Positions 36,340 to 42,841 of a stretch of 64,000 bases of DNA are shown here, piece by piece. The position numbers and the translations under genes were made by a program. Numbering within the stretch: position 1 is the stretch's first letter; the number at the start of each line of letters is the position of its first letter. The notes under the pieces were generated by a model, which did no database searches, had not been told where the DNA came from, and worked only from the letters and a program-made list of their open reading frames with translations. The DNA is from Parasitella parasitica NRRL 2501. Taxonomy: Eukaryota; Fungi; Mucoromycota. The stretch lies in the NCBI GenBank assembly GCA_025201805.1, contig MU619354.1, positions 37,430-101,429 on the forward strand, written 5' to 3'.

Positions 36340-36373
<34 letters not shown>
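36340..36373 (-). repeat. 34-nt poly(A) on the sense strand, 4 nt after the stop of the DUF247-like gene
   Basis: T34 on the + strand. Confidence 0.95.
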
Positions 36374-36377
36374 CAAA

Positions 36378-37484
36378 TTAGTACAGGGGTGGTATAATTT
36401 TTGCATTCTGCAGCACTTGAATCAGAGAAAGCAAAGAAAAGATAGTAGCCATGAACGTCAGGTAAAATGACACTGGCTCAAACATGAGTTTGTTTGTGAG
36501 ATCTCTCCAGAATGCGTTCAAGTACTGGTAAAAGTATTCGTTGGCACTCACGACAAAATCGAAAAGATGCTCATCATAGTCTTCGACGGGAACAAACGAA
36601 GAGGTGCAAAAGTTTTTAAAATCGCAATATCGCATGTCTGTCTCGAACATGCCCTCTTTCTGTGCCAGTTCAAAATCCTGAAATGTCGGTATGAAAGCAG
36701 CCAGAGTCCCCAGATAGGTGGCCAAAAACACATTGATTCTATAGTCGACGCTGACGATACCTCCAAGTCCCCTCATGATTGAATCCAGCGGTGGAACGCA
36801 AATCTTCAACTCCTCTGTCGTGATGATAAACATGTTGTGGCTACTGCTTGCTTGGTAAATCCGCATTCTTTTCCTCGACTTGATAAAGTCTGAAAAGCTC
36901 CTCATTTTTTTGAGCTCGTTTTCAATCTGACTGACAACTCTTTTCCTGGGCAACATCGTTGTTGGAATAGCTGCAGCCATGTTTGATCCGTCGTCTTCCT
37001 TGAGAGGTCTGCATTTTTTATTATAAAAGATGTTGTATATGCGACAACCCGTTTGGCTTTTCAAATAAAATCTTGCCACATGGTCGTGATAAGCCGAGGT
37101 TATTTCAGGGTGCTTGATAGTGTTGTCGATGAGATAAAACACAGACAGGTCCAGTTGACATTTTCGCAGAAATAGTCTTGCCAAGTTCAAAGCCGTGTGC
37201 TTCAGAGTATTCTCCATGTATAGTTTCCACTGCGGCAGCTCTCGGTCTAGATAAATAATCAGGAATTCTTCTTTGACGGATAGCAATGCCTTACGAACGT
37301 CAGTCGTTGTTGACATTGTGCCATCTGCAATTGCTAACGATGCCTTTTTCAACGCATCCACCAAAGCTTCGTATTCATTCGAATCATAGCCGCCGTCGAA
37401 CCGAGTTTGCAGCTCAATGAGGCCATCTACTTCTTCTGGAGGAAGATTCTGAAAGCATTTTTCATCAGGCAATCTTCGAGTCAT
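36378..37484 (-). CDS. Intronless 368-aa tail-anchored protein with DUF247 (UPF0481)-like motifs
   Basis: ATG at 37484 follows an A-run. Contains ELKICVPPL, FLATYLGTLAAFIPTFQDFELAQKEGMFE and ANEYF...FWRDL...FEPVSFYLTFMATIFSLLSLIQVLQ, with a single C-terminal TM helix. Confidence 0.65.
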   Translation of the reverse strand: MTRRLPDEKCFQNLPPEEVDGLIELQTRFDGGYDSNEYEALVDALKKASLAIADGTMSTTTDVRKALLSVKEEFLIIYLDRELPQWKLYMENTLKHTALNLARLFLRKCQLDLSVFYLIDNTIKHPEITSAYHDHVARFYLKSQTGCRIYNIFYNKKCRPLKEDDGSNMAAAIPTTMLPRKRVVSQIENELKKMRSFSDFIKSRKRMRIYQASSSHNMFIITTEELKICVPPLDSIMRGLGGIVSVDYRINVFLATYLGTLAAFIPTFQDFELAQKEGMFETDMRYCDFKNFCTSSFVPVEDYDEHLFDFVVSANEYFYQYLNAFWRDLTNKLMFEPVSFYLTFMATIFSLLSLIQVLQNAKIIPPLY

Positions 37485-37489
37485 GATTC

Positions 37490-37558
37490 TTTTTTTTTTT
37501 TTTTTTTTTAAAAAAACAACAACAACAAAAACAACAACAACAACAACAACAACAAAAA
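37490..37558 (+). repeat. T20 + A7 + (CAA)n compound microsatellite
   Basis: Direct reading. Confidence 0.9.
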
Positions 37559-37979
37559 GACGGGGAGAAAGAGTAGTAAACCAATATTCGAAACTACAAT
37601 GTTTGACAACAGTTGCCTTGAGATGCCACAAAGTCTGATGAATGTAGATCACCCTCGCACCAACAAAATTTGATGTGAGTTTAGCGTTTTCAACACGAAA
37701 TTGGCCAATCATTGCTGATAAAGCAAGATAGACATTGGTGGGTCAAGACTTCAAAGATCGACACGATTATATATATGTAAATGAGGCTGTGCAATTTACT
37801 ACGCCCCATTTTCACCGCAAATCATCTGCTCATATATTATACGTAACTATCTAATAGATGGCATTATCGAAGAAGTCCTATGACACCACAACCCGACTAC
37901 TTTATTCAAAATAGACTCGTTTTTACGCGGAACTGGCCATTTTTAGAGTATCCTTCATTGCAATGCTGCATCACATTGC

Positions 37980-38960
37980 AAGAAATCATGGTTCATACTC
38001 ATCTCCGATTGTGCACCATAATTACAATGCGATCATCAAGTCTACATGATCGTGTAAGGCCTTTCTCATCAACCATATGATGATGCTGCATTGCTTCAGC
38101 TTGGAGTTTGAGGGCGAAAGTCCGACCCAACGCCCATTCCTATTTTTGCGATGATGATTGTCAATGGCAAAACAAATTAAGGCCACAAGAAAACTATTCA
38201 GTGTGGTCTCATCAGGCATAAAGAGGCGAATGTCTGTGCTTTCAATGCGCTTGGTCTCAGCCTCTTCTGCTTATTACCTTGTGCTTTGATTACGCCTCCA
38301 GAGAGCCTCCAGCAAATGGCATTTCCTGGTTATGCTAAATGCAAAGAAGGAGGCATTTTGGACATCGAATCTCCTTTGTATACATTTTGTGGTGCTGTCT
38401 TTCTTTGCTTACTGAGGGGAGCTGCAAATTATCATTTCACAAGATGCTGTGGCTCTCAGGCAAGAAACCCCGGAGAGTCTTATATGGCGAAACAGAATCT
38501 TCCAGTCGCCTGAATTCCAAGCATTCGCCGCGGAAAGTCTCCAGGCAATGGCGACCCACGGTATTACCTGCTGGCCTATTGGTGATAATGATCTGGCAAA
38601 CCAACTATTCGCCATCAATAGCAATGTTATTGCCCTTTTGCCTTGAGATATAGATAATGAATTCTTGGTTTGCCTCGGCAAGAGTTATTGATGGCGGGCC
38701 GTGCATCTTTCGAGGCTAGTAGCTTAAATGCCGTTCACACCTGCAACTATTGAGGAAGCTGGGGGTGCTATCAAAATAAAGAACCAGAGTTAGAGAGAAA
38801 GGCTCTGATTCCATCTTTTACTATACAAAGGAATCATAGTTTAGTGAAGGGACTCTGGGATGAGTGGACCTCTGGGTTGAATGGCCAGGACAGAGTCAGA
38901 GATTTAAATGCAAAGTATGGAACTAAATTAAGGCAAGGGGCCAAAGGTGAAGCTTGTTCA
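37980..38960 (+). mobile_element. Decayed Crypton (CryptonF-like) tyrosine-recombinase transposon: Ndc10-II-like + GCR1_C remnants
   Basis: Motifs in order across frames: AFLINHMMML, EGESPT, NGKTN*G...GLIRHKE..VCAFNALG, PPESLQQMAFP, QDAVALRQETPESLIW..RIFQSPEFQAFA, LWDEWTSGLNGQ..VRDLNAKYGTK.R. Stops and frameshifts are present. Confidence 0.8.
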
Positions 38961-39958
38961 ATATTCATTTGAAAACAAAGTAATAGCAAAAAACTTTATT
39001 CAGTAGAAAGAAAATATTGCACTGAAAGATTGATCTTGATTGAGGAAGTGGAAAGGATCGCCAATGAAAGAAGAAGATGTAGATGCCGTCAAGTATTTGG
39101 ACGAAAGAAGAAAAATACGTGAAACTTGTACTCTTTACAAGCTCACAGATAAGTTGATACAATAAAAAAAGAAGAGAAAAGGAGAAATCTCAAGACGATT
39201 AGATGCCTTTTCATTTGATTTTTAACTATAAAGCCATCAAGTTTTGTTTGTTATATGTGTTCATGTTGATTAAGCATTAGAATAACTTTACAAACTCTAC
39301 TGATTTTTATGAGATTCAAGCCAATGTATTGTATATAGCAATTCGTGGAGCAAACAGCTTCTGTTTATCTAGCATAAGGTCCTCTTGACTAGTTCACCAG
39401 CTTTGCTTCTGCAACAGCACGGAGGTCTTGTATTTTATATAAAAGTCGACATAACATAATCATTGATTATTTCCAAAAGATTAAAGCATATTTTACGTAG
39501 CAAGCTCTGGCTACAATTTTAACGATGTCAGGCAAATGTCATCACAGCTAAACATTGAACTTGGTATTGCATGCCAAGTTAATTATCAAAATAGATTCAA
39601 ATATATAGCTATGGAATTTGTTACAGCAAATTTACGACTTTTTGCTCATTACACTGATTAAACAAAATTGCATAAAGATGATTGTGGCAACTTTAATATT
39701 TCAAATCGTTGTTTCGTGCCTTGACAGTTGATAAAGCCTACCGTATCTTGGTGCTGCTATAACGCCAAGATATTACGGTATCCAGCGATAGTTGAGACCA
39801 TTATACAGATTAGTATCTGAGATAATCTTATAACATGTAGCCGTAAGCTAAAGTGCGTGATACCTGTAGGAATTGATAGTGAAGATATAACACTGTACAC
39901 ATCAAGAGCAGAGCCAAATATGGTAATTGAAAGAATAGCATGACCATTCTCTGTAAAA

Positions 39959-39959
<1 letters not shown>

Positions 39960-40036
<77 letters not shown>
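39960..40036 (+). repeat. A77 homopolymer
   Basis: Direct reading. Confidence 0.95.
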
Positions 40037-40038
<2 letters not shown>

Positions 40039-40893
40039 GAGCTGTTTAGCATTTGTAGAGATATAATTTACGCAATTATCTTGGGAGACAGATATTTTGG
40101 TCTAAGAAGCTTGCGACATTTAGCCTTTTGAAGTTAAAAAGGCTTGAAACTGATATTATCCTGTTCTTGGATGTTATTCAAGTGATATACTATGACCCTC
40201 GTATTCTCAAAGCCAAGTGGCTTCTGCATATGTATAGTAATGGAGTTGGAAGTTTCAGAATTGAATGCACATTCTTTGAGAATATACTATAGTATAGAGA
40301 GTCGTGGGAGTCCAGAAGTTACCATAGGTACATCTCTGAATTAAGATACGATGTATATGGGTGCATATACTTGTCCCGCAGCGTTTGGTCATTCACAATC
40401 CTTTAAATATTCATTATCAAGAGAACTCATCTTGCAACATATGATATATGTATATGTGGAATGGCTAAAGACTTGAGTATGAGCAACTGATTCCTGTACT
40501 GAGTTCCAAGGTGCATTAAACAATAAATAGTGCATCAACTTGCCTAAAGTTTGAGGGTATTTTGGCTCGGCCTTCGGTCAATTATGGGCATGGGAGAATG
40601 TTGATATGTCCAAGTAGCGCACTAGTTTTAATTATAGGTGCTTACATTGCACATGCAACAAGAAAGAGATTGGAGGAAAGAGACGAAAGAGAATGAATAT
40701 CGGACTCCATTTCAATATTTCTTTATGCCACATATAGTGCGTCCCATACATACATTTACATGTACAGACGCACACATGGAATGCCAAGAAAAGGTACATT
40801 GTGCTTGTATTTGCATTTTCTTTATAAAACTGTACATTGCTATTTTAAAATCAGCCTGCAGCTGCTACAGCTAAAACTCAGACATGTTGAAAG

Positions 40894-40947
<54 letters not shown>
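40894..40947 (+). repeat. A54 homopolymer
   Basis: Direct reading. Confidence 0.95.
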
Positions 40948-40948
<1 letters not shown>

Positions 40949-41998
40949 CCAATGGTCGTTATCAAAATGTGTCTAATTTATTATATTGGATAGACAAATG
41001 ATCTACAAGTTTTATGTGCAAGCCATTACTTGTCAATGTCAAATACTTGAAGGTCTCACCCTTGATCTTGGTTGCCAACAGTTTCTTCAACAACAAGTAT
41101 GTTATTTTAATCAAATTATCAGGTTTATAATCTGTACAACCAGTTGACTATTCGGGCCGATTAACTAAATGTACTTGGATTTTTGAAATGTAATGTGTTG
41201 TATTAGTAAAACATGCAGTGTATAAGCTATATTTCTACTGAACCATACAGCGCCATGTATCATTTGTTACACCCGAAAGACGAGCAATTTGTGTTTTTTT
41301 TTTTTTTTTTGGGTATTAATGAATAATAAAGATATTTTGTGTTGTCAAATAAATAATTTTATGCAAAATTCAATATTTGTATCATTCAACTATAATATGA
41401 TACAAATAAATAATAGAACCTTTGCTGTTATGCCGAATACAAAACCGTCAGTGTTCTCTTTGTTGTCCATATCATCAGGGAAATTTGTTTTTCCTTGTGA
41501 TTCCTGGTACGTCTATGAGCCAACAAAAAGGAGGGAACTTTTTTCGGATGTGATAATATCATGCTGTGCTCTTTATTTATTTTTTTTTTTTTTTTATTAT
41601 TATTATCATGCATATCATCATTTAATGCCTTAATCCGCACCTGCTTAAATTATCATTAAACACGTTGTTGATATTTCGTGATCGGTACACAACATGACAT
41701 GAAGCATAATACTATAAATGTGTAAATACAGATGTTCAATTTCATCATTTTACATGCAAAGGAAAGGTTTCATTTATAATAGCCATTTTATTTACCAAAT
41801 CTATTATACTACGATGAGAGAAGGAAAAGCAGAAAGAATTAAGACAAAAAAAAAAGAAGATATGCTACAAAAAAAAGTGGGATGGGATGGGATGGGGGGA
41901 GGGGAGGAGGAGGAGGAAGGGGGAAGGGGGGGGGGGGAAAGAGGTCAGGATATTTATATGATTGTATGTAATATTTATATGGGTATTTTTGATCTTGG

Positions 41999-42376
41999 TT
42001 ACAATGAACGGTGATTTCTAGTTATTTTGTTCGAGTGGATATTGGTCTCTGATCCAGTTGAATTTGAAGGCGACGGTAGAGCTGTTAGCATGGCGGCATC
42101 GTTTTGTCTAGGCGAGGCTGATTGATAGTAATTTATGAAGGATGATGTGAAATTCTTTGGCATAAACTGTTGATTTATCGGATCAAAAGACCAGCATCTT
42201 GAGCAGTATTCATTCTGACTGAGGAATCTGTTGCAACTGTCGCACTTTACATGGCAATTTGAGCAAAACCAGTCGGCTCCTAGGATTTCGTTGCAAGTAC
42301 CGCATGTTGCATGATCTTGGAATGAAGGGGCAGAATCAGAGCGAGGAGACGAAGGTGGGGATAACAGATAGTTCAT
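41999..42376 (-). CDS. Small (125 aa) protein with four CxxC motifs (double zinc-ribbon-like)
   Basis: MNYLLSPPSSP..., CGTC, CSNC, CDSC, CSRC, with a pyrimidine-rich 5' leader and a TATA-like sequence at ~42500. Confidence 0.7.
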   Translation of the reverse strand: MNYLLSPPSSPRSDSAPSFQDHATCGTCNEILGADWFCSNCHVKCDSCNRFLSQNEYCSRCWSFDPINQQFMPKNFTSSFINYYQSASPRQNDAAMLTALPSPSNSTGSETNIHSNKITRNHRSL

Positions 42377-42841
42377 TTGAGGGAAAGATGTGGAAAAAGT
42401 GAAAAGAGAAAGAGAGAAAAAGAGGCAGAGAAAGAGGATGATATTTATACTAAGCACGGACAAGCCGAAAACATGTAAAAATTCCTCTCCTATTTATCCT
42501 TTTTTTATATTTTATGCATCTTCATGTAAGTTGAGGTGTGTCAAAATTGGCAACTTTATTAAACAAGGTTGATTCGGTTGACATTTTGTGCAGTGTTGTG
42601 ATTAGAATGCCATCCACAAAGTCAGTGTAATCGCTCAACGGGATAAGGAATCCCACAACACGTGGTATAGACAATGTTCTGTAAAGTTTGGGTTGTAAGG
42701 AGTAAAGAGGAAGAAGGAGAAAAGGTGCCTATGATATTTAATATTTGGTTATTATAATGTATTTATATATGGGTGCAGATCACCCTCACTCTCTGTATAC
42801 AAAACATCATATACAACATCATCATATCGTATATTTGTTTA

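What the first reader, a model, noticed from the sequence alone, without database searches (positions are those of the whole stretch)
36378..37484. Intact fungal gene with motifs of the nominally plant-specific DUF247 family
Seen: an intronless 368-codon ORF with one C-terminal TM helix, in a region where most neighbours are intron-rich. Recalled family knowledge: the C-terminal half of DUF247 proteins runs L-x-I-P-x-L, then TSY..FM..LI.T..DV.LL...GI, then LN.Y...W...L....F..PW..IS..AA..LL.LT..QT. This ORF shows the same order and similar spacing (LKICVPPL; ATYLGTLAAFIPTFQDFELAQKEGM; ANEYF..FWRDL...FEPV..LTFMATIFSLLSLIQV). In grasses, DUF247 genes are the proposed pollen determinants at the S and Z self-incompatibility loci. 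Inference: this is either a horizontally acquired gene or an unrecognised fungal branch of the family, and could act in membrane-level recognition. The function is speculative.
Basis: partly seen in the sequence, partly recalled or inferred. Interest (0 to 1): 0.8.

Follow-up and report, generated by a model that had tools for sequence, protein, structure and literature searches.

The report
Fungal tail-anchored protein with DUF247-like end
This is a real, strongly conserved, intronless Mucorales gene for a membrane protein anchored by its C-terminal tail; only its last ~110-170 residues are a very distant relative of the C-terminal end of the "plant-specific" DUF247 proteins, so it is a separate fungal family and not a plant gene acquired by transfer.

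Summary
The ORF is confirmed: 36378-37484 (-), 368 aa, intronless, one C-terminal TM helix with a 10-residue tail. It has full-length orthologues in Mucoraceae, is syntenic with Parasitella, is single-copy here, and has dN/dS 0.056 (0.007 in the C-terminal half).

It is not a DUF247 member by Pfam. The window protein gives no PF03140 hit, and one orthologue reaches 14 bits against a 24.8-bit cut-off. Its first ~190-250 residues show no similarity to the rest of DUF247.

The C-terminal module does align co-linearly with genuine plant DUF247 proteins that I fetched and verified:
- hhalign P 2-4e-5, probability 72-78%.
- The real score is higher than all 301 decoy profiles.
- The match persists in the same register without the TM helix.
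- The fungal HMM hits 91/140 real DUF247 proteins and 0/2,940 decoys.

The invariant Y, I, D, G, N, P and Q positions coincide. Weak co-linear hits to the fungal family DUF6601 suggest a shared plant/fungal tail-anchor module.

Recent transfer from plants is not supported, and a recognition role is untested. No solved structure matches the confident AF2 model.

Another first-reader note (s1-787991) covers this same stretch. Overall this is a moderately interesting, distant new branch of unknown function.

The parts
36378..37484 (-). Complete intronless CDS, 368 codons plus a TAA stop at 36378-36380
   Evidence: Orthologues are 59-90% identical over the full length. dN/dS against Parasitella is 0.056.
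37005..37484 (-). Residues 1-160: N-terminal all-helical domain, probably cytosolic. It is specific to this fungal family and has no DUF247 counterpart.
36930..37004 (-). Residues 161-185: variable, disordered linker
   Evidence: pLDDT is below 50 for residues 164-183. Mean identity to orthologues is 0.40 and the length varies.
36480..36929 (-). Residues 186-335: small beta-meander (207-229) followed by the helical juxtamembrane module that aligns with the DUF247 C-terminal region
   Evidence: hhalign without the TM: score 24.6, P 0.0033, 97 columns, same register, higher than all 150 decoys. The greedy alignment extends to residue 192. dN/dS for residues 186-368 is 0.007.
36414..36725 (-). 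Residues 254-357: core of the DUF247-like match (SY..L..IP....F.LA...G ... N.YFY.Y.NAF.RDL..KL..EPV + TM ..IQV)
   Evidence: hhalign probability 71.5%, P 3.6e-5, 102 columns. Real score 43.8 against a decoy maximum of 36.5. Pfam PF03140 positions 299-400/401 hit the same stretch in orthologue P0006. DUF6601 positions 99-148 hit residues 256-306.
36405..36473 (-). Residues 338-360: the single transmembrane helix (tail anchor), with near-invariant I355, Q356, L358 and Q359
   Evidence: Hydropathy, AF2 helix 337-360, and near-invariant columns across divergent paralogues.
36381..36404 (-). Residues 361-368: short conserved tail after the TM helix (NAKIIPPLY)
   Evidence: Conserved even in paralogues of 16-21% identity.
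36340..36373 (.). 34-nt homopolymer (poly-A on the gene strand) starting 5 nt after the stop codon
   Evidence: It is absent from the syntenic Parasitella and Gilbertella orthologues, so it is private to this genome and not a retrogene tail.
37490..37560 (.). Poly-A run plus a (TTG)n microsatellite immediately upstream of the ATG; a low-complexity 5' region, not coding
   Evidence: The conserved Met1 lies downstream of it.

Best explanation
The gene encodes a tail-anchored membrane protein of a small family of early-diverging fungi. The family comprises Mucoraceae/Rhizopodaceae orthologues, divergent Mucor paralogues, and full-length relatives on ~17% GC metagenomic contigs.

Architecture: a family-specific helical N-terminal domain (residues 1-160), a disordered linker, a small beta-meander, and a helical juxtamembrane module ending in one TM helix with a 10-residue tail. 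This last part, securely residues 254-357 and possibly from about 192, is a remote homologue of the C-terminal quarter of plant DUF247 (PF03140 positions ~299-401). It probably also relates to the corresponding part of fungal DUF6601. The rest of the protein is unrelated to DUF247.

Inferred mechanism (not shown). With no signal peptide and a TM only 10 residues from the end, the protein would be inserted post-translationally, with its bulk facing the cytosol. The near-invariant polar residues inside the TM and tail (IQVLQ.A.IIP here; LT..QT in plants), and the extreme constraint on this half, suggest the module is more than a passive anchor. It may mediate a specific intramembrane or juxtamembrane protein-protein contact, either self-association or binding of a conserved partner, while the lineage-specific N-terminal domain supplies the cytosolic function.

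The gene was inherited vertically in Mucoraceae and is not a recent plant transfer.
For: Gene reality and constraint: (dN/dS 0.056 overall; 0.007 for residues 186-368).

Vertical inheritance: co-linear synteny with Parasitella over five genes. The gene is single-copy in its own genome.

Family size: only 16 hits among 1.84e9 representatives, none carrying a Pfam domain.

Homology of the C-module to DUF247:
- Real plant DUF247 genes were fetched and verified at E 1e-90 to 1e-136.
- hhalign P was 0.0039 with shallow alignments, 3.6e-5 with probability 71.5% with deeper ones, and 1.8e-5 with probability 78% on the C-halves.
- None of 301 decoy profiles reached the real score: 43.8 against a maximum of 36.5 and means of 15-17.
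- Without the TM the same register persists, and the score is higher than all 150 decoys.
- The fungal C-module HMM hits 91/140 real DUF247 proteins at E <= 0.1 and 0/2,940 locally shuffled or reversed decoys.
- Pfam itself places P0006 residues 259-357 on PF03140 positions 299-400/401.
- All 30 top ESM-Atlas clusters are PF03140, and no other named family appears once PF03140 is excluded.

Conserved positions that coincide in the alignment: Y257/Y421, I265/I429, D270/D434, F271/V435, G278/G442, N315/N, F325/W492, P337/P504, Q356/Q.

Spacing from the SY motif to the TM: about 82 residues here, about 85 in plant DUF247, about 86 in the DUF6601 profile.

Topology.

Literature: PMC9623065 and PMC10221614 describe a conserved C-terminal TM in DUF247.
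Against: - No hit reaches a curated threshold. For PF03140, the best score in the family is 14.1 bits against 24.8, and the window protein scores nothing. For PF20246, the best is 18.1 bits against 27.
- The hhalign probability is only 72-78%, and identity is 15-17%.
- About half of the hhalign score comes from the EPV/NPW + TM segment: 43.8 falls to 24.6 when it is removed.
- The reverse HMMER test (plant C-module HMM against the fungal family) is only weakly enriched, and its top scores tie with decoys.
- The 120 added plant sequences are mostly one subfamily, so they are not independent.
- The Atlas 'recognition' value (1725) is below the level at which its scores are reliable.
- No structural comparison with a DUF247 model was possible.
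- Topology, localisation, expression and the proposed intramembrane-interaction role are all inferred, not shown.
Confidence: 0.66

Rival explanations
1. The protein is a lineage-specific orphan tail-anchored protein, and its resemblance to DUF247 is convergent or generic. Amphipathic juxtamembrane helices followed by a TM helix would be shaped by common membrane-insertion constraints, with no common ancestry.
For: All database hits are below threshold. Identity is 15-17%. Half of the score comes from the TM-proximal segment. The reverse HMMER test hardly separates real sequences from decoys. The N-terminal 250 residues are unrelated.
Against: Locally shuffled decoys, which keep local composition and hydrophobicity, never reach the real score (0/301, 0/150 and 0/2,940). 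The register is identical across four independent set-ups and in Pfam's own hit. Seven to nine conserved positions of the two families coincide, with the same spacing. The language-model neighbours are exclusively DUF247.
Confidence: 0.22
2. The gene was acquired from a land plant by horizontal transfer, one of the reader's alternatives. It would be a truncated or diverged plant DUF247 captured by a Mucorales ancestor.
For: DUF247 is large and nearly confined to land plants in Pfam, with only three AM-fungal entries, and these have themselves been proposed as HGT (PMC10221614). The gene is intronless among intron-containing neighbours.
Against: Only the C-terminal quarter of the domain is detectable, at 15-17% identity, and the plant hallmark N-terminal motifs are absent. 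The family has diverged deeply within fungi: paralogues at 16-21% identity, and full-length relatives on 17% GC contigs. The gene is syntenic with Parasitella among housekeeping genes. GC content is unremarkable. Many plant DUF247 genes are also intronless, so this feature does not discriminate.
Confidence: 0.04
3. The protein is simply a divergent member of the fungal family DUF6601 (PF20246), and the DUF247 signal is secondary.
For: DUF6601 is the most frequent weak Pfam hit: 7 of 8 orthologues with best E 0.0023, and P0017 covering profile positions 91-204/240. The family is fungal.
Against: All scores are 13.8-18.1 bits against a 27-bit cut-off. A scan of the own genome with PF20246 found nothing. 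The Atlas gives no usable named neighbour once DUF247 is excluded. I could not obtain DUF6601 sequences, so no profile-profile test was run. Plant DUF247 proteins also give weak DUF6601 hits at their TM end, which fits all three being related rather than this rival alone.
Confidence: 0.1

Closest known systems
Plant DUF247 / UPF0481 (Pfam PF03140), e.g. the grass S- and Z-locus DUF247 pollen determinants, asparagus SOFF and Arabidopsis DUF247-1
   Same: Both have a single TM helix at the C-terminus followed by a short tail (10 aa here, 12-26 aa in plants) and no signal peptide. Many genes in both groups are intronless. The last ~105-165 residues align co-linearly: an SY-x7-I-x4-D-hydrophobic-x6-G block, then N-x-Y-aromatic...aromatic-x11-P, then a TM helix ending in Q, with the same ~82-85 residue spacing.
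   Different: The first ~300 positions of the 401-position domain (GPYHHG, LDGCF, LLENQ.P motifs) have no counterpart. Scores are below the Pfam threshold. The gene is single-copy, whereas plants carry 20-70 copies, often in tandem (PMC10221614). It is under strong purifying selection, unlike the hypervariable S/Z alleles.
Fungal DUF6601 (Pfam PF20246)
   Same: It is a fungal family of unknown function. Weak, recurrent, co-linear hits fall on the same module: residues 256-306 on profile 99-148, and P0017 on 91-204. Plant DUF247 TM ends hit profile 181-217.
   Different: Every hit is below the 27-bit cut-off. No DUF6601 sequences were available for a profile-profile or structural test. The only literature mention is a domain annotation in a Curvularia gene table (PMC10512319).
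Generic tail-anchored (TA) membrane proteins (GET/TRC40 clients)
   Same: One TM segment within the last ~30 residues, no N-terminal signal, and the bulk predicted to be cytosolic.
   Different: TA is a topological class, not a homologous family. The near-invariant polar residues in the TM helix and tail are unusual for a passive anchor.

Membership tests
DUF247 (PF03140) | Score above the Pfam gathering threshold (24.8 bits) over the 401-position domain | tested here: not met
   The window protein gives no hit at E <= 10. The best score in the family is P0006: 14.1 bits, E 0.03, profile positions 299-400 only. Genuine plant proteins score 304-455 bits.
DUF247 (PF03140) | N-terminal and central conserved motifs (invariant G-P-Y, D-G-x-F and L-E-N-Q-x-P columns of the plant alignment) | tested here: not met
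   Plant invariant columns are listed. hhalign of residues 1-250 against the first 410 plant columns gives P 0.19 over 15 columns.
DUF247 (PF03140) | C-terminal block TSY..FMD.LI....DV..L...GI, then N.YY...W..W...L....F.NPW | tested here: met
   Met in remote form (15-17% identity). hhalign P 1.8e-5 to 3.6e-5, probability 72-78%. The real score is higher than all decoys, and conserved positions coincide.
DUF247 (PF03140) | Single C-terminal transmembrane helix with a short tail | tested here: met
   The hydropathy maximum is at 340-358 with 10 residues after it; plant proteins have 12-26 residues after theirs. AF2 predicts helix 337-360.
DUF247 (PF03140) | Same three-dimensional fold as DUF247 AlphaFold models | not testable with these tools
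DUF6601 (PF20246) | Score above the Pfam gathering threshold (27 bits) | tested here: not met
   14.2 bits for the window protein, and at most 18.1 bits in the family. The own-genome scan found nothing.
DUF6601 (PF20246) | Profile-profile or structural similarity to DUF6601 members | not testable with these tools
Tail-anchored membrane proteins (topological class) | One TM segment close to the C-terminus, no signal peptide or other TM | tested here: met
   Windows scoring >= 1.6 start only at residues 337-340, and the N-terminal maximum is -0.38. Actual insertion and orientation were not tested.

The most novel reading that the evidence does not exclude
The C-terminal juxtamembrane-plus-tail-anchor module of DUF247 may not be a land-plant invention. 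It could be an ancient module shared by plants and fungi, comprising plant DUF247, Dikarya DUF6601, and this family of Mucorales and other early-diverging fungi, each fused to a different lineage-specific N-terminal domain. If so, a single-copy gene in a genetically tractable Mucor relative would offer a simple system for finding what this module binds or does in the membrane. That question is still open for the grass S/Z self-incompatibility determinants and for asparagus SOFF.
Probability: 0.5. Interest if true: 0.55.

Novelty: new variant of a known kind. Interest (0 to 1): 0.42.

Why it matters
DUF247 proteins sit at the centre of grass self-incompatibility and of an asparagus sex-determination gene, yet their biochemical activity is unknown. 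The family is also treated as essentially plant-specific: PMC10221614 lists only three AM-fungal entries and suggests these arose by HGT.

A vertically inherited, single-copy, strongly constrained fungal family that keeps only the C-terminal module has two consequences. First, it identifies that module as the separable, conserved unit of the domain. Second, together with the weak DUF6601 link, it argues that the module pre-dates or at least extends beyond land plants.

The practical value is modest. It gives a hypothesis about domain boundaries and a tractable organism for localisation and interaction studies. It does not reveal the function.

Tried and rejected
- Direct family scans. Pfam gave only sub-threshold hits; NCBIfam gave none.
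- PDB sequence searches with the single protein and with the profile found nothing meaningful.
- Scans of the own genome with PF03140 and PF20246 found nothing, and the controls did not ring either, so this is uninformative.
- The first AF2 model, from 8 close sequences, was unusable at pLDDT 44. Adding divergent paralogues raised it to 84.
- The word search with the broadened fungal alignment at E <= 10 brought in no DUF247 or DUF6601 proteins.
- The Atlas search excluding PF03140 gave no usable named neighbour.
- Retrogene idea (an intronless gene with poly-A just after the stop): rejected. The homopolymers are absent at the syntenic Parasitella orthologue, and 6 of the window's 8 runs cluster locally.
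- Recent plant HGT: rejected (see rival explanations).

Method note: the DNA motif used to fish plant DUF247 genes out of metagenome contigs was written from my own recollection of the family's conserved block. The resulting ORFs were accepted only after Pfam verification.

Full report
OBSERVATION

On the minus strand, 36378-37484 encodes 368 residues plus a stop. A longer in-frame start at 37712 only adds a translated (TTG)n/poly-A low-complexity stretch. Met1 at 37484 is the start shared by all orthologues.

The protein has one hydrophobic segment at residues 338-360, followed by ten residues, and no N-terminal signal. This is a tail-anchored topology.

The gene is intronless here and in every relative whose locus I could fetch. 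Its Parasitella neighbours all contain introns.

WHAT FAMILY IT BELONGS TO

The word search found seven full-length relatives at 59-90% identity in Parasitella, Mucor lusitanicus, Gilbertella, a contig labelled Rhizopus arrhizus, and unnamed assemblies.

A full HMMER profile search of 1.84 billion representatives found only 16 proteins. These are fragments, a Rhizopus stolonifer fragment, and divergent proteins of 300-536 aa that share only the C-terminal ~115 residues. One of the divergent proteins is from Mucor hiemalis. None has a Pfam domain.

Two full-length relatives at 29-32% identity, and two divergent ones, lie on metagenomic contigs of about 17% GC. Their source is therefore some very AT-rich eukaryote and not a Mucorales genome.

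In its own 32.8-Mb genome the gene is single-copy, and the M. hiemalis-type paralogue is absent.

IS IT A REAL, FUNCTIONING GENE, AND WAS IT TRANSFERRED?

Against the Parasitella orthologue, dN/dS is 0.056 overall. It is 0.144 for residues 1-185 and 0.007 for residues 186-368.

The gene and its four downstream neighbours (ribulose-phosphate 3-epimerase, a 482-aa gene, GLTP, NIPA) are co-linear with Parasitella. Synteny ends just upstream of the gene. Gilbertella has different neighbours. Gene GC (0.43) resembles that of adjacent coding DNA. This pattern indicates vertical inheritance within Mucoraceae.

THE DUF247 QUESTION

Pfam gives no hit above threshold. The window protein has only a 14-bit hit to the fungal family DUF6601 (PF20246, cut-off 27). 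Seven of eight orthologues show the same hit on the same residues (256-306 to profile 99-148). One orthologue, P0006, has a 14-bit hit to DUF247, with residues 259-357 on profile positions 299-400 of 401.

The ESM-Atlas language-model search returned PF03140 clusters for all 30 best hits (score 0.93-0.94, 186-192 of 256 features shared), but with a low recognition value. Once PF03140 was excluded it returned no usable named neighbour.

To test the lead by alignment I needed real DUF247 sequences. A degenerate DNA pattern for the family's conserved block, written from my own recollection, found 52 JGI metagenome loci. Many carry full-length intronless ORFs, some in tandem. Ten of these scored E 1e-90 to 1e-136 on PF03140. 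The last word search added 120 plant proteins, mostly of one subfamily.

Profile-profile comparison gave the following results:
- With shallow alignments: P 0.0039.
- With 25 fungal and 140 plant sequences: probability 71.5%, P 3.6e-5, 102 columns, pairing window residues 254-357 with the plant C-terminus.
- On the C-terminal halves alone: probability 78%, P 1.8e-5, extending at low confidence to residue 192.

Controls on the comparison:
- The real score of 43.8 was higher than that of the reversed profile and of 300 locally or globally column-shuffled plant profiles (means 15-17, maximum 36.5).
- With the EPV/NPW motif and the TM helix removed from both sides, the same register returned at score 24.6 (P 0.0033), against 150 decoys with a maximum of 20.1.
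- An HMM of the fungal C-module hit 91 of 140 real DUF247 proteins at E <= 0.1 and none of 2,940 reversed or locally shuffled decoys.
- The reverse test (plant HMM against the fungal family) was only weakly enriched.

In the alignment, conserved positions of the two families fall on each other: Y257/Y421, I265/I429, D270/D434, F271/V435, G278/G442, an N, F325/W492, P337/P504, and the Q near the end of the TM helix.

The spacing from the SY motif to the TM helix is about 82 residues here, 85 in plants and 86 in the DUF6601 profile. Two of ten plant DUF247 proteins give weak DUF6601 hits at their TM end.

By contrast, residues 1-250 show nothing against the first 410 plant columns (P 0.19).

CONCLUSION ON RELATEDNESS

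The C-terminal module is, more likely than not (I estimate about 0.7-0.75), a true remote homologue of the DUF247 C-terminus. The protein as a whole is not a DUF247 family member.

The first (LKICVPPL with L.IP.L) is not what the aligner finds.

STRUCTURE

With the broadened alignment, AF2 gives a confident model (pLDDT 84.1, pTM 0.77). Its elements are:
- a helical N-domain;
- a disordered linker (164-183);
- three short strands (207-229);
- helices 233-330;
- a long terminal helix, 337-360.

HOW IT PROBABLY WORKS (INFERENCE)

The topology implies post-translational insertion, with the ~335-residue N-terminal part in the cytosol.

The TM helix and its tail are the most conserved parts of the whole family, including polar residues (I-Q-V-L-Q-x-A-x-I-I-P). 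dN/dS in this half is 0.007. Plant DUF247 proteins likewise keep polar T/Q in their TM, and the TM is regarded as essential in the grass SI model, which proposes dimer or tetramer formation (PMC9623065).

I therefore favour a module that makes a specific intramembrane or juxtamembrane contact, either self-association or binding of a conserved partner, with the lineage-specific N-domain providing the output.

Being single-copy and strongly constrained argues against an S/Z-type polymorphic recognition determinant. Within-species diversity was not testable here.

NOVELTY

No paper in the searchable library links DUF247 to Mucorales. PMC10221614 states that, outside land plants, Pfam lists the domain only in three AM fungi, and suggests HGT for those. 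DUF6601 appears once, as a table annotation.

I class this as a new, distant variant of a known kind. It is interesting mainly because it isolates the C-terminal module as the conserved unit and extends it into fungi.

OTHER NOTES

Another first-reader note (s1-787991) covers the same stretch and calls it an accessory island with a Crypton relic. The gene itself is syntenic and core-like, but the 37.7-42.8 kb stretch upstream is gene-poor and AT-rich, carries long homopolymers, and coincides with the synteny break. I did not test the Crypton claim.

Noticed in passing
window 36340-41595: Six of the window's eight A/T homopolymer runs of 15 nt or more cluster here, including runs of 77 nt (39960-40036) and 54 nt (40894-40947). 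They flank the gene on both sides but are absent from the syntenic Parasitella and Gilbertella loci, so they are lineage-private expansions.
   Followed up: partly
window 37700-42800: A gene-poor, AT-rich (GC 0.31-0.34) stretch with no long ORF lies upstream of the gene. Synteny with Parasitella (Peptidase_M16, EMG1, NUDIX upstream there) breaks exactly here.
   Followed up: partly
L059, L060, L061 (metagenome / Logan contigs): Full-length and divergent relatives of the family (P0023, P0019) sit on contigs of 17% GC, far below Mucorales (37-38%). The source organism is unknown. An extremely AT-rich fungal lineage such as anaerobic gut fungi is a guess only.
   Followed up: partly
P0005 (Mucor lusitanicus V8B55DRAFT_1587537): The deposited 338-aa model lacks 33 conserved residues and has a short out-of-register stretch where the other orthologues are continuous. 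It looks like a spurious intron in the annotation of an intronless gene.
   Followed up: no
P0003 ('Rhizopus arrhizus' G6F42_022305, 1,657-nt contig): It is 82% identical to the window protein and closer to Mucor-type orthologues than the Rhizopus stolonifer fragment is (77% over 44% of the query). The very short contig may be contamination or a mislabel in that assembly.
   Followed up: no
L021, L032, L007, L047 (plant-derived metagenome contigs): Tandem arrays of DUF247 genes spaced about 3 kb apart, several truncated to the C-terminal ~112-155 aa open frame. In L021 and L032 only the C-terminal block stays open after the motif.
   Followed up: no
PMC10512319, gene table of the Curvularia clavata KK-1 region: The only DUF6601 protein mentioned in the literature library lies between HET-domain, ankyrin and NB-ARC/TPR genes, a neighbourhood typical of fungal non-self recognition loci. 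This is an anecdote and was not analysed.
   Followed up: no
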